Below the pieces are notes generated by a model. The model was not told the origin of the DNA, made no database searches, and saw only the letters and a list, made by a program, of their open reading frames with translations. Positions 39,173 to 50,041 of a stretch of 64,000 nt of DNA are shown here, in pieces (the first letter of the stretch is position 1; each line of letters begins with the position of its first letter). Source of the stretch: Zancudomyces culisetae HAW-14-8 (lineage: Eukaryota > Fungi > Kickxellomycota); assembly GCA_052426225.1 (NCBI GenBank), contig JBNJNM010000022.1:186001-250000 (forward strand), written 5' to 3'. A program made the position numbers and the translations under genes.

Positions 39173-42100
39173 ATGGATCAAGAAGAAAATGTACGGGCCA
39201 AGCAGCTCCAAGAAAAAGCGAGGAGATGGACACAAATGAACAGCAAAAAGTACAGTGAAAAGCGGCGGTTTGGATTTGTGGACCAGGAAAAGATGCAGAT
39301 GCCAGCTGAACATCTGCGCAAAATAATAAAAGATCATGGAGACATGAGTTCGCGCAAGTTTCGGCTGGACAAGAGGGTGTATTTGGGAGCACTAAAGTAC
39401 ATTCCGCACGCGGTGATAAAGTTGCTGGAGAATATGCCGATGCCCTGGGAACAGATCCGGGAGGTGCCGGTGCTGTACCACATTACGGGAGCGATTACGT
39501 TTGTTGATCAGATTCCGCAGGTGATTGAGCCGCACTACATTGCACAATGGGGGACGATGTGGATTATGATGCGGCGTGAAAAGCGGGATCGTAAACATTT
39601 CAAGCGGATGCGATTTCCAGCGTTTGATGATGAGGAGGCGCCGTTGGATTATGGCGATAATTTGTTGGATGTGGAGCCGCTGGAGGCGATCCAGATGGAA
39701 TTTGATGAGGAGGAGGACAAGGCAGTAGCCGAGTGGTTCTATGACCACCGAGCGCTGGTGGAGGATTCAGATTATGTAAATGGCGAGAGCTATAAGCGGT
39801 GGCGGCTGGATCTGGCACAGCAAGCAACGTTGCATCGGTTGGCAGGACAGCTGTTGTCGGATATTGTAGATCCCAACTACTACTATTTGTTTGATCTGCG
39901 GTCGTTTGTGACGGCCAAGTGTTTGGGGCTGGCGATTCCGGGGGGACCAAAGTTTGAGCCAATGTACAAGGATATAGTGGATGTAGATGAGGATTGGAAC
40001 GAGTTTAATGATATCAACAAAGTGATAATACGACAGCCGATACGCACAGAGTACAAGATAGCGTTTCCGTTTCTATACAACAGTATGCCACGGGGGATCC
40101 AATTGTCTACATATCATTGGCCAACGGTGATGTATGTGAAGGCGGAAGATCCCGAGTTGCCAGCATATTATTTCGATCCGGTGTTGAATGCGATATCGTC
40201 ACGCACGTTGAATGTGGAGGCGGGGAAGCGGCATGTAGAAACCAAGACAGATCCAAATGATGAGTTTGGGTTACCAGAGGATGCGGGGGCGTTTTTTGCA
40301 GAGGATGAATTATATACAGAGGGGACGGCAAGTGGGATAGAGTTGTACTGGGCGCCACAGCCATTCAATAAACGCACGGGACGCACTAAGCGAGCAGAGG
40401 ATATACCGCTGGTGAAGGAGTGGTATTTGGAGCATTGTCCAGCGGGGATGCCGGTGAAAGTGCGAGTGTCATATCAGAAGCTGTTGAAGTGTTATGTATT
40501 AACATCGTTACACAAGAGGGCGCCGAGAGCAATGAGCAAGCGAAATTTGTTTAGGCAGTTGAAGGCAACCAAGTTTTTCCAGCGGACCGAGATAGATTGG
40601 GTGGAGGCGGGGTTGCAAGTGTGTAGACAAGGGCATAATATGTTGAATTTATTGATACATCGCAAGAATTTGAATTATTTGCATTTGGATTACAATTTCA
40701 ATTTGAAGCCGGTCAAGACACTGACAACAAAGGAGCGTAAGAAGAGTCGGTTTGGTAATGCGTTCCATTTGTGTCGAGAGATCCTTCGATTGACCAAGCT
40801 GGTAGTGGATGCACATGTGCAGTATCGATTGGGGAATGTGGATGCGTATCAACTAGCGGATGGACTGCAATATGCATTTGCGCATGTTGGGCAGTTGACG
40901 GGGATGTATCGATACAAGTATCGGTTGATGCGACAGGTGCGAATGTGTTTTGGGCGGGGAACAAAGGTGTTAATGGAAGATGGAAAAGTGTGTGAGATTG
41001 AAAAAATCCGGGTAGGGGATGTAGTGGTGGACGAGGAAGGTAAAGGAGTGGTTGTGGAGGCATTGAGCCGGGGAAAATCGCCAATGTATGAGATTGAGAG
41101 TGAATATGGCAAATTCAAGGTCAACATGGCACATATTTTGGTGATAGTTATAGATTTGGGCAAGTTAAAGAACAGCTGTAGTAGTAAGGTAGAATTTGAG
41201 TATGAGGAACAACTTGGGTTTGACATTCCAGTGATCAAAAAGAGTTTGAAGAGTGTGATGATGGCTCAAAGAGTGAACAAGAAAATTGAATGGGAAGTGA
41301 CGGCAGCAGATTATTATAGAGCAGTTCAGAAATACAAGTATATATGCGAAATTAGTCGAATGAAACGAGTTTCATACCAAAGTAAAGATACAGTGGATGA
41401 GGAAGGGAATGGTGATTTGGATGGATTGGGTACAATGTTGATGTATGCAAGGAATGTGGATTCGAAACAGATTGAAATAGGGCCAATGAGTAAAAAAGAG
41501 TTTTGTCGGGTGACAGAAGCCATGAAGATATATAATCCAGAGGTTAGTTATAAAGTGGAATTTGTAAATCAGGATGTAAAAATCAAGATGGACAAGGTAG
41601 AGTATTTGGAGGAGGGAGTATTGGGGAAAATTAGGGAGAGAGGAATACACTCGATAAGTATTGCATCGAGACAAAGGATTTGTAAAGTCATGCAAGAGAT
41701 ACAGGTGGAAAAAGTGGAAACTCAGACAAGGACAGGAGAGAAAGCGACGGTGTTTACTGGAGGAGATTATTCTAGTTATTTGCTGGCGAGTGAGATTGTT
41801 AACAGTTTAGTTGGAATAGGAGAAAAAGAAAAGAATGTTAAGGCTAGAGTAGTAGGAGGAGAAAAATGTTTATTGGTTATTACAAGAGAAAGTGTAAAAG
41901 AATACCGATTCAAAATAACAAAGAGTATAAACGAGGAAGAAAAGTATTATGGAATAGCAGTCAAGGGAGAAAAGGCACGGTTTGTGTTGGCAGATGGAAC
42001 AGTAGTACATAACTGTAAGGATTTGAAGCATTTGATATACTATCGATTTAATACGGGGCCAGTGGGGAAGGGACCAGGGTGTGGGTTCTGGGCACCGACG

Positions 42101-45100
42101 TGGAGGGTATGGATGTTCTTTTTGCGAGGGATAGTTCCATTGTTAGAGCGATGGTTGGGAAATCTATTGGCGCGGCAGTTTGAGGGAAGGCATTCAAAGG
42201 GGATAGCCAAGACAGTGACGAAGCAACGAGTGGAGTCGCATTTCGATTTGGAGTTGAGAGCAGCAGTGATGCATGATATTTTGGATATGATGCCAGAAGG
42301 GATTCGGGCAAATAAAAGCAAGACGATCTTGCAGCATTTATCGGAGGCCTGGAGGTGTTGGAAGGCCAATATTCCGTGGAAAGTGCCAGGGATGCCACAG
42401 GCAATAGAAAACATGTTGTTGAGGTATGTCAAGGCGAAGGCAGATTGGTGGACATCGGTGGCATATTACAACCGCGAGCGAATCCGACGAGGAGCGACGG
42501 TAGATAAGGCAGTAGCCAAGAAGAATTTGGGGAGATTGACACGGTTGTATCTGAAATCTGAGCAGGAAAGACAGCATAATTACTTGAAGGACGGACCATA
42601 CGTAACGGCAGAAGAGGCGGTGGCGATATATACGACGACGGTGCATTGGTTGGAGGCACGGCGATTTGCGCCTATTCCATTTCCACCATTGTCATATAAG
42701 CATGACACCAAGCTGTTGATATTGGCGTTGGAAAGGTTGAAGGAGGCGTATTCAGTACAAGGACGATTGAATCAGAGCCAGCGAGAGGAGTTGGGGCTGA
42801 TTGAGCAGGCGTATGATAATCCACACGAGACACTTAACCGAATTAAACGGTTGTTGCTAACGCAGCGGGCATTTAAAGAGGTAGGATTGGAGTTTATGGA
42901 TATGTATAGTCATTTAGTGCCTGTTTATGATATTGAGCCACTTGAAAAGATTACGGATGCGTACTTGGACCAATATCTATGGTACGAAGCGGACAAACGG
43001 AGATTGTTTCCAAACTGGATCAAACCATCGGATACCGAACCAGTACCACTGCTAGTGTACAAATGGGCGCAGGGTATTAACAATTTAGAGAATGTATGGC
43101 ATACAGCTGATGGAAGCCGAGTGGTGTTGTTGCAGACAAAGTTGAGTAAAGTGTATGAAAAGATAGACTTGACACTTTTGAATCGATTGTTGCGGCTGGT
43201 GCTGGACCATAATTTGGCGGATTATATGACGGCCAAGAACAATGTTGGGATTACGTTTAAGGACATGAACCATACAAATGTGTATGGATTGATTCGCGGG
43301 TTGCAATTTGGATCGTTTATATTTCAATATTATGGGTTGGTGATAGATTTGTTACTGCTTGGGCTACAGCGGGCTACGGAGCTTGCAGGACCACCGGCAT
43401 CACCGAATGCGTTTTTGCAATTTGCGGATGTTGAGACTGAGACACGACATCCTGTGCGACTGTACATGCGGTATGTGGATCGGATATATATGGTGTTGCG
43501 GATGAGTGCGGACGAATCGCGCGATTTGGTACAGCGGTACTTGACGGAACATCCGGATCCCAACAACGAGAATGTTGTCGGGTATAACAACAAGAAGTGC
43601 TGGCCCAGGGATTGTAGGATGCGGTTGATGAAGGCAGATGTCAATTTGGGGCGAGCGACGTTTTGGGAAATGCGGAATCGGTTGCCGCGCTCGCTTACTA
43701 CAATAGAGTGGGGCGTGGATACGTTTGTGTGTGTGTATTCGGCGGATAATCCTAATTTGTTGTTTGATATGGGAGGATTTGAGGTGAGGATTTTGCCAAA
43801 GATTCGGGAGGAAAGCTCGGTAGTACGTGATGGTTGTTGGGCGTTGATTAATGCAACTACTAAGGAGCGTACGGCGATGGCGTTTTTGCGGGTTGAGCAA
43901 GAAGCCATTAGTCGGTTCAGCAACCGAGTGCGCCAGATTCTGATGTCTGCTGGAAGTACAACTTTTACCAAAATTGCCAATAAGTGGAATACAGCACTGA
44001 TTGGGTTGATGACGTACTATAGAGAAGCGGTGGTTCATACCCACGAAATGTTGGATTTGTTGGTGAAATGTGAAACCAAAATCCAAACCCGTGTCAAGAT
44101 CGGTTTGAATTCCAAGATGCCATCGCGCTTCCCACCCGTTCTCTTTTATTGTCCCAAGGAGCTAGGTGGGTTGGGAATGTTGAGTATGGGCCATGTGTTG
44201 ATTCCTCAATCTGATTTGCGATGGATTAAACAGACTGATACTGGCATTAGTCATTTTAGAGCTGGTATGTCCCATGATGAGATGATTCCTAATTTGTTCC
44301 GATACATAATGCCATGGGAGGCCGAGTTTGTGGATAGTCAGCGGGTATGGGCAGAGTATGCGCTCAAGCGGTATGAGGCCAACCAGCAAAACCGAAAGTT
44401 GACATTGGAAGATTTGGAGGATAGTTGGGATCGAGGAATTCCTCGGATCAATACGTTGTTTTCCAAGGACCGACATACGCTGGCATACGATAGGGGCTGG
44501 AGAGTGCGTGGCGAGTGGAAGATGTATCAGGTGTTGAAGAACAGTACGTTTTGGTGGACAAACAATCGCCACGATGGACGGCTGTGGCAGCTGAATGCGT
44601 ACCGAACGGATATAATCCAGGCTCTTGGAGGAATTGAGTGTATTCTTGAACACACTTTATTCAAGGGGACGGCGTTTCCTACGTGGGAAGGTCTGTTTTG
44701 GGAACAGTCTAGTGGGTTTGAGGAGTCGATGAAGTACAAGAAGCTAACCAATGCTCAGCGTTCTGGACTTAACCAGATTCCCAACCGACGTTTTACTTTG
44801 TGGTGGTCGCCTACCATTAACCGTGCCAATGTTTATGTAGGTTTCCAGGTGCAATTGGATTTGACTGGTATTTTTATGCATGGTAAACTGCCTACTTTGA
44901 AAATCAGTTTGATTCAGTTGTTTAGGTCTCATCAGTGGCAACGTATTCATGAATCCATAGTAATGGATTTGTGTCAGGTTTTGGATCAGGAACTTGATGC
45001 TTTACAAATTGAAACTGTTCAAAAGGAATCTATTCATCCTAGGAAGTCCTATAAAATGAATTCTTCATGTTTTGATCCTTCAACTCTTGTTCAATCTTTA

Positions 45101-48100
45101 TCTGACACTGTTGTCATTAAACCTATTGAATCTGTACAACCTGGTGATTTATTACTTGGTGATGATGGCTTATTCTCTAGACGTGTATTGGAAACTTGGG
45201 TTGGTTATTCCAATTTAATGTATAAAATCATGTATTCTGGTGGTTATTATATTGTTACTCCAAGACATACCCTTGTATTACAATACAACTCTTTGTTTAC
45301 TATTTCTACCAAGTTTATCCACAACAACAATAACAACAACAACAACAATATTAATAATCATAAATCTCTGGAATTGGTATTTTATGATGTCAAACTCAAC
45401 AGATATTCCATTATAATTCCAATCAACAATAACAACAACAATCACAACAACAACAACAGAAAACCTACTGTCAATGGTAAAGATAATGATAATTACACTG
45501 GTCGAAATTGGGGTAATCATTATATTTATGATTCATTTGCTCCAGCAAATTCAACTTTTTCTGCTTTATCTATGGCATATTCCTTTATTCACAAACTCAT
45601 TTCTTCTTCTTCTTCTACAACAACAAAAACAACAACAACAACAAGTAGTGGTGGTGGTGGTTGTGGTAATATTCAATTATTACAACCAAATTCAATAGTT
45701 GAACTTGCAGTATCTCAATATATTCAATTACCAAAACAAACACAAGACCTTCTAGTAGGTTATAAACTCTCAGCAACTAACGATAAGTTACCAATTTCAA
45801 TTACACCAATTCATAAACCGAACCAAAAATACATTGGAGTACGTACTTGTGGAAACATGAGATTTGTATTGGCAGATGGGTCAGTAGTCCACAACTGTGC
45901 AGATATCTTGTTGTTTGCTGCATATAAATGGTCAGTTAGTACCCCATCACTGTTATCCGACAGTGCAACGCGTGACCGGATGGACATGGCGACAACTCAG
46001 AAATTCTGGTTAGATGTACAGCTCCGGTGGGGCGACTTTGACAGTCACGATATAGAGCGGTATACTCGTGCCAAGTTTTTGGATTATACGACCGACAACA
46101 TGTCGATATATCCATCGCCTACAGGTGTGATGATCGGGTTTGATTTGGCGTACAATTTGTACTCGGCGTATGGAAATTGGTTCCCAGGAATGAAGCCATT
46201 GGTGCACCAAGCACTGGCCAAGATTAACAAGGCCAATCCGGCACTGTATGTATTGAGGGAGCGGATCCGTAAAGCACTGCAACTATACAGTTCCGATCCT
46301 ACTGAGCCGTATCTGAATTCTCAGAATTATGGCGAGTTGTTTAGTAACCAAACTATTTGGTTTATTGACGATACCAATGTGTACCGTGTAACCATGCACA
46401 AGACATTTGAAGGCAATTTGACTACCAAACCAATTAATGGTGCCATTATGATTTTCAACCCTCGCACTGGCCAGCTGTTCCTTAAGGTTATTCATACTTC
46501 TGTTTGGGCTGGCCAGAAGCGACTTGGCCAACTTGCTCGATGGAAGACTGCTGAAGAAGTCGCTGCGTTGATTCGATCGTTGCCGGCTGAAGAACAGCCT
46601 CGCCAGCTGATTGTTACGCGCAAGGGAATGTTGGACCCCTTAGAAGTGCACTGTCTTGATTTCCCCAATATTGTTATTAAGGGATCAGAACTGCAGTTGC
46701 CATTCCAATCCATTCTCAAGGTTGAAAAGTTTGGCGATTTGATTCTTAAGGCTACTGAGCCTCAGATGTGCTTGTTTAATTTGTATGATGATTGGTTGTC
46801 TTATATTTCTTCTTACACGGCCTTTTCTAGGCTGGTGCTTATTTTGAGAGCTTTGCATGTCAATAATGAGCGAACAAAGGTGATTTTAAGACCCACCAAA
46901 TCTATATTGACTTTGCCTCATCATGTATGGCCTTCTTATTCACTTCCAAGCTCTGCTGCTTTTAACAGCCAAGCTAACGAAAATGAATCGGATTTGGACT
47001 GGGTTTCGGTAGAAAACAGTCTAAAGGACTTGATTCTAGCTGACTATAGCAAGAAAAACAATGTCAATGTGGCTTCTCTGACCCAATCCGAAATCCGCGA
47101 CATTATTCTTGGAATGGAAATTATGGCTCCCTCAGCACAGCGTCAACAACTTGCCGAGCTTGAAAAGCAGCAGCAAGAGCAGCAACAGTCTCAGCAACAA
47201 CAGCAGTTACTGGCTACTACGACCAAATCCCACAACATTCATGGCGATGAAATCATCACTACTACGACTTCGGCCTATGAGTCGCAGTCTTTTACTTCCA
47301 AATCCGACTGGAGAACCCGGGCGCTTTCTTCGTCTTCTCTGTTTATCCGTGCAAACAATATTTATATTTCCTCGTCTTCTCTATCTTCTCAGCTTGCTCA
47401 ACACACCTTTGTCTTGCCTCGTGATGTCCTCAAATCGTTCATCTCTATCTCTGATCTCCGGATTCCTATAGCTGGCTATCTCTACGGCTTTGCTACCAAT
47501 TCTGTCTTTGAAATCCATGCCATTGTCATGGTTCCTCAATACGCCCCCTCCGCCGCCGCCATCAACCTTCCTTCCTCCTTACCCGACCACCCTTACCTCT
47601 CCTCTTATTCCCTTCTTGGTATCATTCGCACCTCTTCCTCTGCAACCGAATCTCCCTTTTTGCTTCCCCATGATTGTCTCCTCGCTGCATCTACTCTCTC
47701 CCTCTCCAAATCCAACCCCAACTCTAATTGTTCTCCTGACCGTTTTGTCGTCATCACTGCTGCTTTTACTCCTGGTTCTGTCTCTTTATCTGCGTTTGGT
47801 ACCTCTGAACCTGGTATTGAACAATGGGCACTACCTCTCCTCGAATCCTCCACTTCCACTTCTTCTTCTTCTTCTAAGCTTTTACCTGTGGGTACTGTGG
47901 AACTTTCTCATGACCAATTGGAATCTTATTCCCAACACACTGCGTTATATTCCGTTCCACACACTTTATTGCTAACCACTACATATTCCGGATTTTTCAT
48001 GGTGCCAAGCACTGCCGAAAGCGGGGATGGATGTTGGAACTACAACCTGCAGTCGTCGCTGTGGGTGCCCAGTATTTCGTATTCGTTGACTGTTGATTGT

Positions 48101-48247
48101 CCTCTCGAGTTCTATCATATGAAACACCGTGTCCTTCATTTCCATACCTTTTCGGATCTTGCCATTAGTAATAACAGTACTTTTGGTAGCCGATCGGTTG
48201 ATTATGATGTTGATGGTCTTGAAGATGCCGAAAATGACTTGTTTTAA
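39173..48247 (+). CDS. PRP8: U5 snRNP core protein Prp8 precursor, 3024 aa with two inteins (predicted spliced product 2392 aa)
   Basis: Continuous Prp8 motifs ([78 protein letters not shown]); removing the two inserts restores a normal length. Confidence 0.99.
40946..42013 (+). mobile_element. Prp8 intein 1 (356 aa, class 1) at MRQVRM/CKDLKH, with degenerate endonuclease region
   Basis: Block [14 protein letters not shown]; block [10 protein letters not shown]; blocks [25 protein letters not shown] followed by extein Cys. Flanks rejoin to conserved [19 protein letters not shown]. Confidence 0.97.
45068..45895 (+). mobile_element. Prp8 intein 2 (276 aa, class 1 mini-intein) at YKMNSS/CADILL
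   Basis: Block [27 protein letters not shown]; block [11 protein letters not shown]; blocks [24 protein letters not shown] followed by extein Cys. Flanks rejoin to conserved [18 protein letters not shown]. Confidence 0.97.
45321..45662 (+). repeat. Trinucleotide microsatellites (AAC, TCT, ACA, GGT) inside intein 2
   Basis: Encode poly-N (twice), poly-S, poly-T and poly-G runs. Confidence 0.9.
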
Positions 48248-48640: not shown

Positions 48641-50041
48641 ATGGATATGAATACAAATGCAAAACAGCACCAAACACCCATAATCGTAGTGGGTGCCGGA
48701 ATAGTCGGAATAACCACCGCATATGTCCTACAGGCTTCGGGAAAATATGCCGTTACAGTAGTTGCCGAATACTTGCCACTTCCCACACTTTCGGATGCGT
48801 ATACAACCTCTGCTGCTCCCGCTTGGGCTAGTCCGTTTGCTGGTGGAAATTGGCATGGTTATGCAAAGCTTGACCAAACTGATTTACAACGTAAGTGCAT
48901 TTTCATTCTTATTATTTTCATTACTATTACTATTATTATTAATTGTATTTATAAAACATACAATTTAATCTTGCGTCTATTTTAATATGTACTTTTTTTT
49001 CTTTTTCTTTTATTTATTTATTTCTTTTTTCCTCACCCTCACCCTAACCCTAACCCTCACCCTAACCCTAATCCTCACCTACCCTACATAATAGAAAAAG
49101 AACTTTTTACCCTCCACATGCTACAAAAGCTTTGCGATTTATACCCAGATTCCTCCATCAAACGCGTAAAAGGTTATGAATACCGTAAGGCTGCTGACTA
49201 TATTGAACCATACTTTATCCGCCACATCTCGGGTGTCCGCTACATCCCCACATCCGAACTTCCACCCCAGGGTATCGATGTCGGCGTCGAATTCGATACC
49301 GTCGTTTTCAATGCTCCTGAATATCTCGCTTGGCTTGCCCGCAAATTTGTCGCCATTGGTGGAGTCCTTAGACAGTCTACCAGGTTGTCATCTCTCTCCG
49401 ATGCATTGAAATATGCCCCAACACCATCATCACCATCATCCAATGAAAATAATAATGGTGCTGGTGTTGTCGTGGTAAATTGTACGGGATTGGGTAGTCG
49501 GTATCTGGTCGATGTTGCCGATGCTGCAGTCACTCCCGCACGTGGCCATGTAGTACTTGTCAGGAGCCCCGAATGCCAGGACGTAACAGTCTCTGATGAA
49601 TCCGAGTGGTTCTATGTTATCCCCCGTGGAAACGGCACCGTTATTCTAGGCGGTACCTATGATATCGGAAACTGGTCACAAACCACAAATCCCGATACCA
49701 CCACCCGAATCCTCCAAAACACCATCCGTCTCTGCCCGCAACTCATCGGCGAACCTGCTACCTCCCACACCACTGCCCAGAATATCGACGATCGTGTCGC
49801 AAAGTTGCGTGAGCGCATTGTTTCTGAACACGTTGGGTTCCGCCCCATGCGTGTTGGTGGTGTAAGACTGGAATTGTCCCAGCTTGATGTGGGAAATGTC
49901 CCCGTTGTTCATAATTATGGTCATGGTGGATACGGTTACCAATCTAGTTGGGGATACGCCTATGGTGCCATGAAATTGGTTGACCAAGCCGTAAACTCTT
50001 CTTGTTCTGTTGGTCCTAAACATACCCAATCCAAATTATAA
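48641..50041 (+). CDS. D-amino-acid oxidase family FAD oxidoreductase, peroxisomal; exons 48641-48890 and 49095-50041
   Basis: IIVVGAGIVG FAD motif, WASPFAGGNW, VVVNCTGLGS, GFRPMR, VVHNYGHGGYGYQSSWG, C-terminal SKL (PTS1). Intron gtaagt(48891)...atag(49094) splices in frame (DLQQKELFTLHML). Confidence 0.95.
49031..49086 (+). repeat. Interstitial telomere-like (CCCTAA/CCCTCA)n array in DAO intron
   Basis: cctcaccctcaccctaaccctaaccctcaccctaaccctaatcctcacctacccta, about nine hexamers. Confidence 0.85.

What the first reader, a model, noticed from the sequence alone, without database searches (positions are those of the whole stretch)
40946..45895. One fungal PRP8 gene with two inteins, both at non-canonical sites
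Seen: two complete in-frame Cys1...His-Asn/Cys+1 inserts at precursor residues 592-947 (QVRM/CKDL, N-terminal domain, just after the invariant YRYKY motif) and 1966-2241 (MNSS/CADI, endonuclease-like domain). Established: fungal Prp8 inteins typically sit singly at site a (WEKA/SGF); other sites have been reported mainly in protists. Inference: this spliceosome core needs two protein-splicing events to mature, and one or both sites or the double occupancy may be new for fungi. Four junction cysteines could make maturation redox- or metal-sensitive.
Basis: partly seen in the sequence, partly recalled or inferred. Interest (0 to 1): 0.92.

Follow-up and report, generated by a model that had tools for sequence, protein, structure and literature searches.

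The report
Two inteins at unlisted Prp8 sites
In this insect-gut-type fungus the core spliceosome protein Prp8 is interrupted by two self-removing protein inserts at positions missing from the published lists I could read, and its relatives carry up to ten such inserts in the same protein, twice the published maximum I found.

Summary
Confirmed. The intron-free, single-copy PRP8 ORF (39173-48247, 3024 aa) holds two in-frame class-1 inteins: I1 (40946-42013, 356 aa, QVRM/CKDL, +1 = yeast C680) and I2 (45068-45895, 276 aa, MNSS/CADI, +1 = yeast C1698). Both keep Cys1, the block-B His, His-Asn and Cys+1, and both models match the Cryptococcus Prp8 and VMA1 intein folds. I1 has a decayed endonuclease region; I2 is a mini-intein. 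The host is a Harpellales fungus, probably Zancudomyces. Neither site is among published sites a-g or the Anaeramoeba site. Neither is private to this genome: at least 12 and 10 other Prp8 proteins carry allelic inteins there (Smittium, Dimargaritales, Glomeromycota, a chytrid). Double occupancy is not new for fungi (Batrachochytrium). The larger result is that Kickxellomycotina Prp8 is an intein sink: 19 occupied sites in my sample, 12 unlisted, with 10 inteins in Mycoemilia and 9 in Dimargaris, against a published maximum of five. Splicing itself and redox or metal control are untested; no RNA run was listed. The scan's other intein notes in this genome concern this same gene only.

The parts
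39173..48247 (+). PRP8 precursor ORF, 3024 aa, no introns; mature extein 2392 aa; single copy in the genome
40946..42013 (+). Intein I1, 356 aa, site QVRM/CKDL in the N-terminal domain; Cys1, block B N60-x-x-H63 (nt 41123-41134), terminal His-Asn
41396..41899 (+). Decayed LAGLIDADG endonuclease region of I1 (about aa 151-318): 8-16% identity to alleles, catalytic motifs not recognisable
42014..42016 (+). +1 Cys of I1 (yeast C680, human C605)
44462..44464 (+). Empty site NTLF/SKDR; Ser here in Kickxellomycotina, Gln in 81 of 93 other Prp8; occupied in four Smittium species and five Dimargaritales proteins
44699..44719 (+). Empty canonical site a (WEQS/SGF); occupied in three Smittium species
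45068..45895 (+). Intein I2, 276 aa mini-intein, site MNSS/CADI in the endonuclease-like domain; Cys1, block B T64-x-x-H67 (nt 45257-45268), terminal His-Asn
45320..45682 (+). Low-complexity linker of I2 with Asn, Ser, Thr and Gly runs; low pLDDT
45896..45898 (+). +1 Cys of I2 (yeast C1698, human C1626)

Best explanation
Both inserts are old, cis-splicing class-1 inteins of the fungal VMA1/PRP8 type. The 3024-aa precursor is translated whole. Each intein excises itself by the standard route: N-S shift at Cys1 helped by the block-B His, transfer to the +1 Cys, Asn cyclisation helped by the penultimate His, then S-N shift. Two excisions give the 2392-aa Prp8. Each intein entered its own site by endonuclease-driven homing in an ancestor, at the latest the common ancestor with Smittium, and has since been inherited. 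I1 has a decayed endonuclease and I2 has none, so neither is likely to home now; they persist because only precise loss is tolerated at these conserved positions. Shown: motifs, fold, allelic families, conservation confined to the splicing blocks. Inferred: splicing activity, homing history, immobility, and loss of inteins at site a and NTLF/SKDR in this lineage.
For: Collinearity with human Prp8 after removal. Cys1 and block-B His invariant in both allele sets, His-Asn in every complete allele. I1 model against Cryptococcus Prp8 inteins Z about 22, rmsd 1.4-1.6 A over 138-140 residues; I2 model TM 0.87-0.88 by target length, E about 3e-7. With the window sequences left out, each insert fits its own site's profile best: 143.8 against at most 92.7 bits, and 144.3 against at most 94.3. 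Identity to alleles is 29-58% in splicing blocks and 8-16% in the I1 endonuclease region. I1 groups with Smittium site-1 inteins (SH-aLRT 96) and I2 lies in the site-2 clade (87); the extein is sister to Smittium (100). Glomeromycota and Mycoemilia site-1 alleles still hit Hom_end, two of them also LAGLIDADG weakly. PRP8 is single copy.
Against: No splicing assay, proteomics or RNA reads (none listed). The intein tree has only 137 columns and both window inteins sit on long branches; site-1 inteins are not one clade in the best tree, though one clade is not rejected (p-AU 0.30). The I1 central region has pLDDT of about 35-65, so its endonuclease origin rests mainly on alleles.
Confidence: 0.86

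Rival explanations
1. The inteins have been kept as environmental switches: metal or oxidant modification of Cys1 stalls one or both splicing events and throttles spliceosome assembly in the insect gut.
For: The Cryptococcus site-a intein is inhibited by copper and zinc (PMC6805012). Both inteins persist despite endonuclease decay.
Against: The cysteines are generic. Occupancy is patchy: Coemansia lacks both sites, and this gene lacks two inteins that Smittium keeps, as expected of selfish turnover. Persistence is explained by the need for precise deletion.
Confidence: 0.15
2. One intein arose from the other by a jump inside this gene, as their similar C-terminal ends suggest.
For: 11 of the last 13 residues match; other site-1/site-2 pairs reach at most 10. 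Holding the two as a clade is not formally rejected (p-AU 0.165).
Against: Each fits its own allelic family far better and they fall in separate clades. BLASTP finds only the last 33 residues. I1 also matches three inteins of other species at 11 of 13, and only 6 of 11 shared codons keep the third base. A short old conversion tract remains possible.
Confidence: 0.05
3. Each site was invaded separately and horizontally in several lineages, including this one, rather than inherited from a Kickxellomycotina ancestor.
For: Site 1 also occurs in Glomeromycota and an unnamed metagenomic eukaryote, site 2 in the chytrid Geranomyces; site-1 inteins scatter in the tree.
Against: For this gene the nearest site-1 inteins are those of its nearest host relatives; endonuclease decay and drift to local base composition indicate long residence. 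Transfer probably explains the cross-phylum cases, not the Harpellales ones.
Confidence: 0.15
4. The inserts are removed from the RNA as spliceosomal introns, or stay in the mature protein.
For: A GT lies one base inside each insert; no RNA data were available.
Against: Both are open in frame for 828 and 1068 nt, every candidate GT/GC-AG pair damages a conserved motif, and protein-level catalytic residues are conserved across phyla.
Confidence: 0.03

Closest known systems
Fungal Prp8-a inteins (Cryptococcus neoformans, PDB 6MX6; PMC6805012)
   Same: Same host protein, Cys1, block-B His, His-Asn end, Hint fold; I2 is likewise a mini-intein.
   Different: Other insertion sites (yeast 680 and 1698 rather than site a, which is empty here); +1 is Cys, not Ser; separate allelic families.
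Batrachochytrium dendrobatidis Prp8 with two inteins (sites a and b; PMC3749507)
   Same: A fungal Prp8 needing two splicing events.
   Different: Different sites: AWR/CWKA and WEKA/SGF.
Anaeramoeba ignava Prp8 with five inteins (PMC10710043) and Capsaspora Prp8 with three (PMC3749507)
   Same: Several non-allelic inteins in one Prp8.
   Different: Anaeramoeba has 45-103 inteins genome-wide, while no other intein was found in this genome. Relatives of this fungus reach 9-10 in Prp8 alone.
Saccharomyces VMA1 intein PI-SceI
   Same: Best structural match of I1 (Foldseek E 4.5e-17); same Pfam family; Asn in place of Thr in block B.
   Different: I1 is about 100 aa shorter and its endonuclease motifs are not recognisable.

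Membership tests
Class-1 intein | In-frame insertion whose removal restores a conserved host protein | tested here: met
Class-1 intein | Cys/Ser at position 1, block-B His, terminal His-Asn, Cys/Ser/Thr at +1 | tested here: met
   I1 C1, N60xxH63, HN, C+1; I2 C1, T64xxH67, HN, C+1
Class-1 intein | Hint fold | tested here: met
   (predicted models)
Class-1 intein | Self-catalysed excision with extein ligation | not testable with these tools
   needs a reporter or proteomics
Full (homing) intein | Intact LAGLIDADG endonuclease blocks | tested here: not met
   I1: no Pfam hit, no similarity to the Cetraspora allele's endonuclease, weak I-DmoI match Z 6.5. I2: region absent.
Published Prp8 alleles a, b, c, d, g and the Anaeramoeba RNase H site | Same insertion point in Prp8 | tested here: not met
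   Controls mapped directly: b Batrachochytrium AWR/CWKA, c Spizellomyces EVH/CLDF, g Acytostelium FHL/CREI, a WEKA/SGF; d is 87 residues after a, MDL/CQV; AKWK/TAEE
Published Prp8 alleles e and f (Capsaspora) | Same insertion point in Prp8 | tested here: inconclusive
   Capsaspora Prp8 was not retrieved. By eye its published e and f inteins resemble the FY/xPKE and NLT/TKPI families, not I1 or I2; site 1 also lies outside the core region where e and f are placed. Indirect but consistent.
Spliceosomal intron | GT-AG ends that restore the conserved reading | tested here: not met

The most novel reading that the evidence does not exclude
Both sites are undescribed Prp8 intein alleles, and the gene belongs to an unreported intein build-up in Kickxellomycotina Prp8: at least 12 unlisted sites and up to ten functional inteins in one essential protein, the highest load known for a single polypeptide, several at positions where the host residue had to change to Ser or Cys.
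Probability: 0.65. Interest if true: 0.78.

Novelty: new variant of a known kind. Interest (0 to 1): 0.62.

Why it matters
Prp8 inteins are the main model for eukaryotic protein splicing and an antifungal target, yet only eight sites and at most five inteins per protein appear in the papers I could read. These two sites, and the 9-10-intein Prp8 of relatives, more than double the site list. They give a natural series (0 to 10 inteins; intact, decayed and deleted endonucleases at one site) for asking whether inteins in one chain splice independently or in order, why Prp8 rather than other genes attracts them, and whether retention is selfish or regulatory. The chemistry itself looks ordinary.

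Tried and rejected
RNA reads: no run was listed. A degenerate DNA scan of metagenomes for the site-1 junction gave five chance matches, none Prp8. The search of protein representatives with I1 gave only distant Hint hits, many after P-loop motifs of other proteins, and no close donor. NCBIfam gave no hit above cut-off. Genome-wide searches found no further intein; they are lower bounds. The exact window proteins are not in the collection, so the species is inferred. The seven-intein metagenomic protein was too long for contig look-up, and the 9- and 10-intein proteins exceed the same limit, so their DNA was not checked. Papers for the structural role of the two sites were not found. InBase, the figure with residue numbers in Green 2019, and the Monier and Anaeramoeba supplements were not available. 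Published Capsaspora intein sequences had no reference and were compared by eye only, not typed into a tool. Rejected: RNA introns, an intragenic jump, recent mobility, and double occupancy as a fungal first.

Full report
Observation. The window holds one uninterrupted ORF at 39173-48247 that encodes a 3024-aa Prp8. The three extein pieces match human Prp8 523-604, 605-1625 and 1626-1823 end to end, so the +1 residues are human C605 and C1626, yeast C680 and C1698. No GT/GC-AG pair near the junctions restores the conserved sequence. PRP8 is single copy, and no other intein was found in the 27.1-Mb genome.

Host. The extein is sister to four Smittium species with full support, inside Kickxellomycotina. 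The genome has 27,093,596 bases in 25 contigs; the Zancudomyces culisetae HiFi assembly has 27,184,066 in 26, mitochondrial contigs included (PMC12611240). Zancudomyces is therefore likely, but this is inference.

Anatomy. I1 has Cys1, a VMA1-like block B (N60, H63) and a His-Asn end; I2 has Cys1, T64-x-x-H67 and His-Asn. AlphaFold models built on allele alignments (mean pLDDT 67 and 76, about 85-95 in the splicing blocks) match PI-SceI and the Cryptococcus Prp8 inteins first. In I1 the segment where Glomeromycota and Mycoemilia alleles carry a recognisable homing endonuclease has fallen to 8-16% identity, against 29-51% in the splicing blocks; it has no Pfam hit and only a weak I-DmoI resemblance. 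In I2 the endonuclease is missing altogether, as in Smittium and Geranomyces alleles, while Dimargaritales alleles keep a degenerate one; the linker has gained Asn, Ser, Thr and Gly runs. Both interiors have lower third-position GC than the exteins (0.38 and 0.23 against 0.46-0.57) and follow the local strand skew, as expected under relaxed selection.

Relatives. A search with I1 inside the full-length precursor returned long Prp8 proteins of Smittium simulii and Tieghemiomyces. A whole-length search restricted to long proteins gave 600 hits, of which 120 were listed and mapped. Site 1 is cleanly occupied in 12 other proteins: three Smittium, Mycoemilia, five Dimargaritales, Cetraspora, Entrophospora and an unnamed metagenomic eukaryote; two more show one junction only. 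Site 2 is occupied in 10 others: four Smittium, three Dimargaris, two Dispira and the chytrid Geranomyces. Seven other proteins carry both cleanly. Each window intein fits its own site's family best and groups with it. The sample shows 19 distinct occupied sites, counting the Coemansia WQQQ/S site as site a. Mycoemilia scoparia has ten inserts, Dimargaris verticillata and D. xerosporica nine, D. cristalligena eight, each starting with Cys, ending in Asn and followed by Cys, Ser or Thr. The five-intein Tieghemiomyces and four-intein S. mucronatum genes translate directly from genomic DNA, and S. simulii has four junction pairs in one frame; the largest genes could not be checked this way. This is a ranked sample, not a census.

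Mechanism. The most likely working is ordinary class-1 cis-splicing, twice per precursor (pathway from established knowledge and PMC6805012). Both insertions interrupt regions that are 92% identical to Smittium, so retention would probably disable Prp8. From memory and not checked here, yeast residue 680 lies near the inositol-hexakisphosphate pocket of the N-terminal domain, and 1698 lies beside the vestigial active-site acid of the endonuclease-like domain. The history I infer is homing into each site in an ancestor, then endonuclease decay (I1) or deletion (I2). Site a and NTLF/SKDR are empty here but filled in Smittium and Dimargaritales; the second keeps the Ser typical of Kickxellomycotina where most Prp8 have Gln, which fits precise loss. 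A jump of one intein from the other is unlikely, though an AU test on 137 columns does not reject it. Redox or metal control is possible by analogy with Cryptococcus but has no specific support here.

Comparison with what is known. Published sites are a-g (PMC3749507, PMC6805012) and one more in Anaeramoeba (PMC10710043); the letters b, d and e are used inconsistently between papers, so I compared junction sequences. Batrachochytrium, Spizellomyces and Acytostelium proteins in my sample fix a, b, c and g; d follows from its distance to a; e and f are assigned only by eye from the published Capsaspora inteins. None coincides with QVRM/CKDL or MNSS/CADI. Two inteins in a fungal Prp8 were already known from Batrachochytrium, and five in one protein is the highest number I found in print. 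Searches of the held library found no paper on Prp8 inteins in these taxa; subscription journals, InBase and two key supplements were out of reach, so prior description cannot be excluded.

Verdict. Real inteins of a known kind at two sites that appear to be undescribed. The finding keeps substantial interest because it leads to an apparently unreported accumulation of inteins in Kickxellomycotina Prp8. Interest 0.62; new variant of a known kind.

Noticed in passing
P0212 (Mycoemilia scoparia, 6458 aa); P0161, P0162 (Dimargaris, about 6000 aa): Prp8 with 10 and 9 complete-looking inteins; the highest published count per protein that I found is five.
   Followed up: partly
Prp8 proteins: Ten further unlisted sites: [74 protein letters not shown]/SxVY.
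   Followed up: partly
sites WYEA/SKR, TINR/SxVY, DDEE/SPLD: The +1 Ser is found almost only in occupied alleles; empty alleles mostly have Asp, Ala or Pro, so these inteins arrived with, or needed, a change of the host residue.
   Followed up: partly
P0003; L012:2001-9547: Unnamed metagenomic eukaryotes, outside the sampled fungi in the extein tree for P0003, have Prp8 with seven inteins (P0003) and a related one with a site-1 intein (P0085).
   Followed up: partly
P0001, P0215, P0227; L013:6207-6825: Public gene models cut false introns into inteins and hide junctions; the S. simulii DNA has a full NTLF/SKDR intein that its protein model truncates.
   Followed up: yes
window:46400-48247: The Prp8 C-terminal Jab1/MPN region is Ser-rich and only 39-44% identical to relatives (Smittium to Phycomyces 59%); Pfam JAB does not hit.
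   Followed up: partly
window:39173-48247: GC skew turns from about +0.3 to negative along the gene, and the two inteins take the composition of their position.
   Followed up: partly
window:35794-37719 and 48641-50041: Flanking genes: COG2 upstream and a D-amino-acid-oxidase-like gene downstream, the latter apparently with an intron holding CCCTAA-like repeats near 49030-49090.
   Followed up: no
P0014, P0017, P0022, P0023: Distant I1 hits include proteins in which one Hint domain follows another directly or after a few residues; hosts not identified.
   Followed up: no
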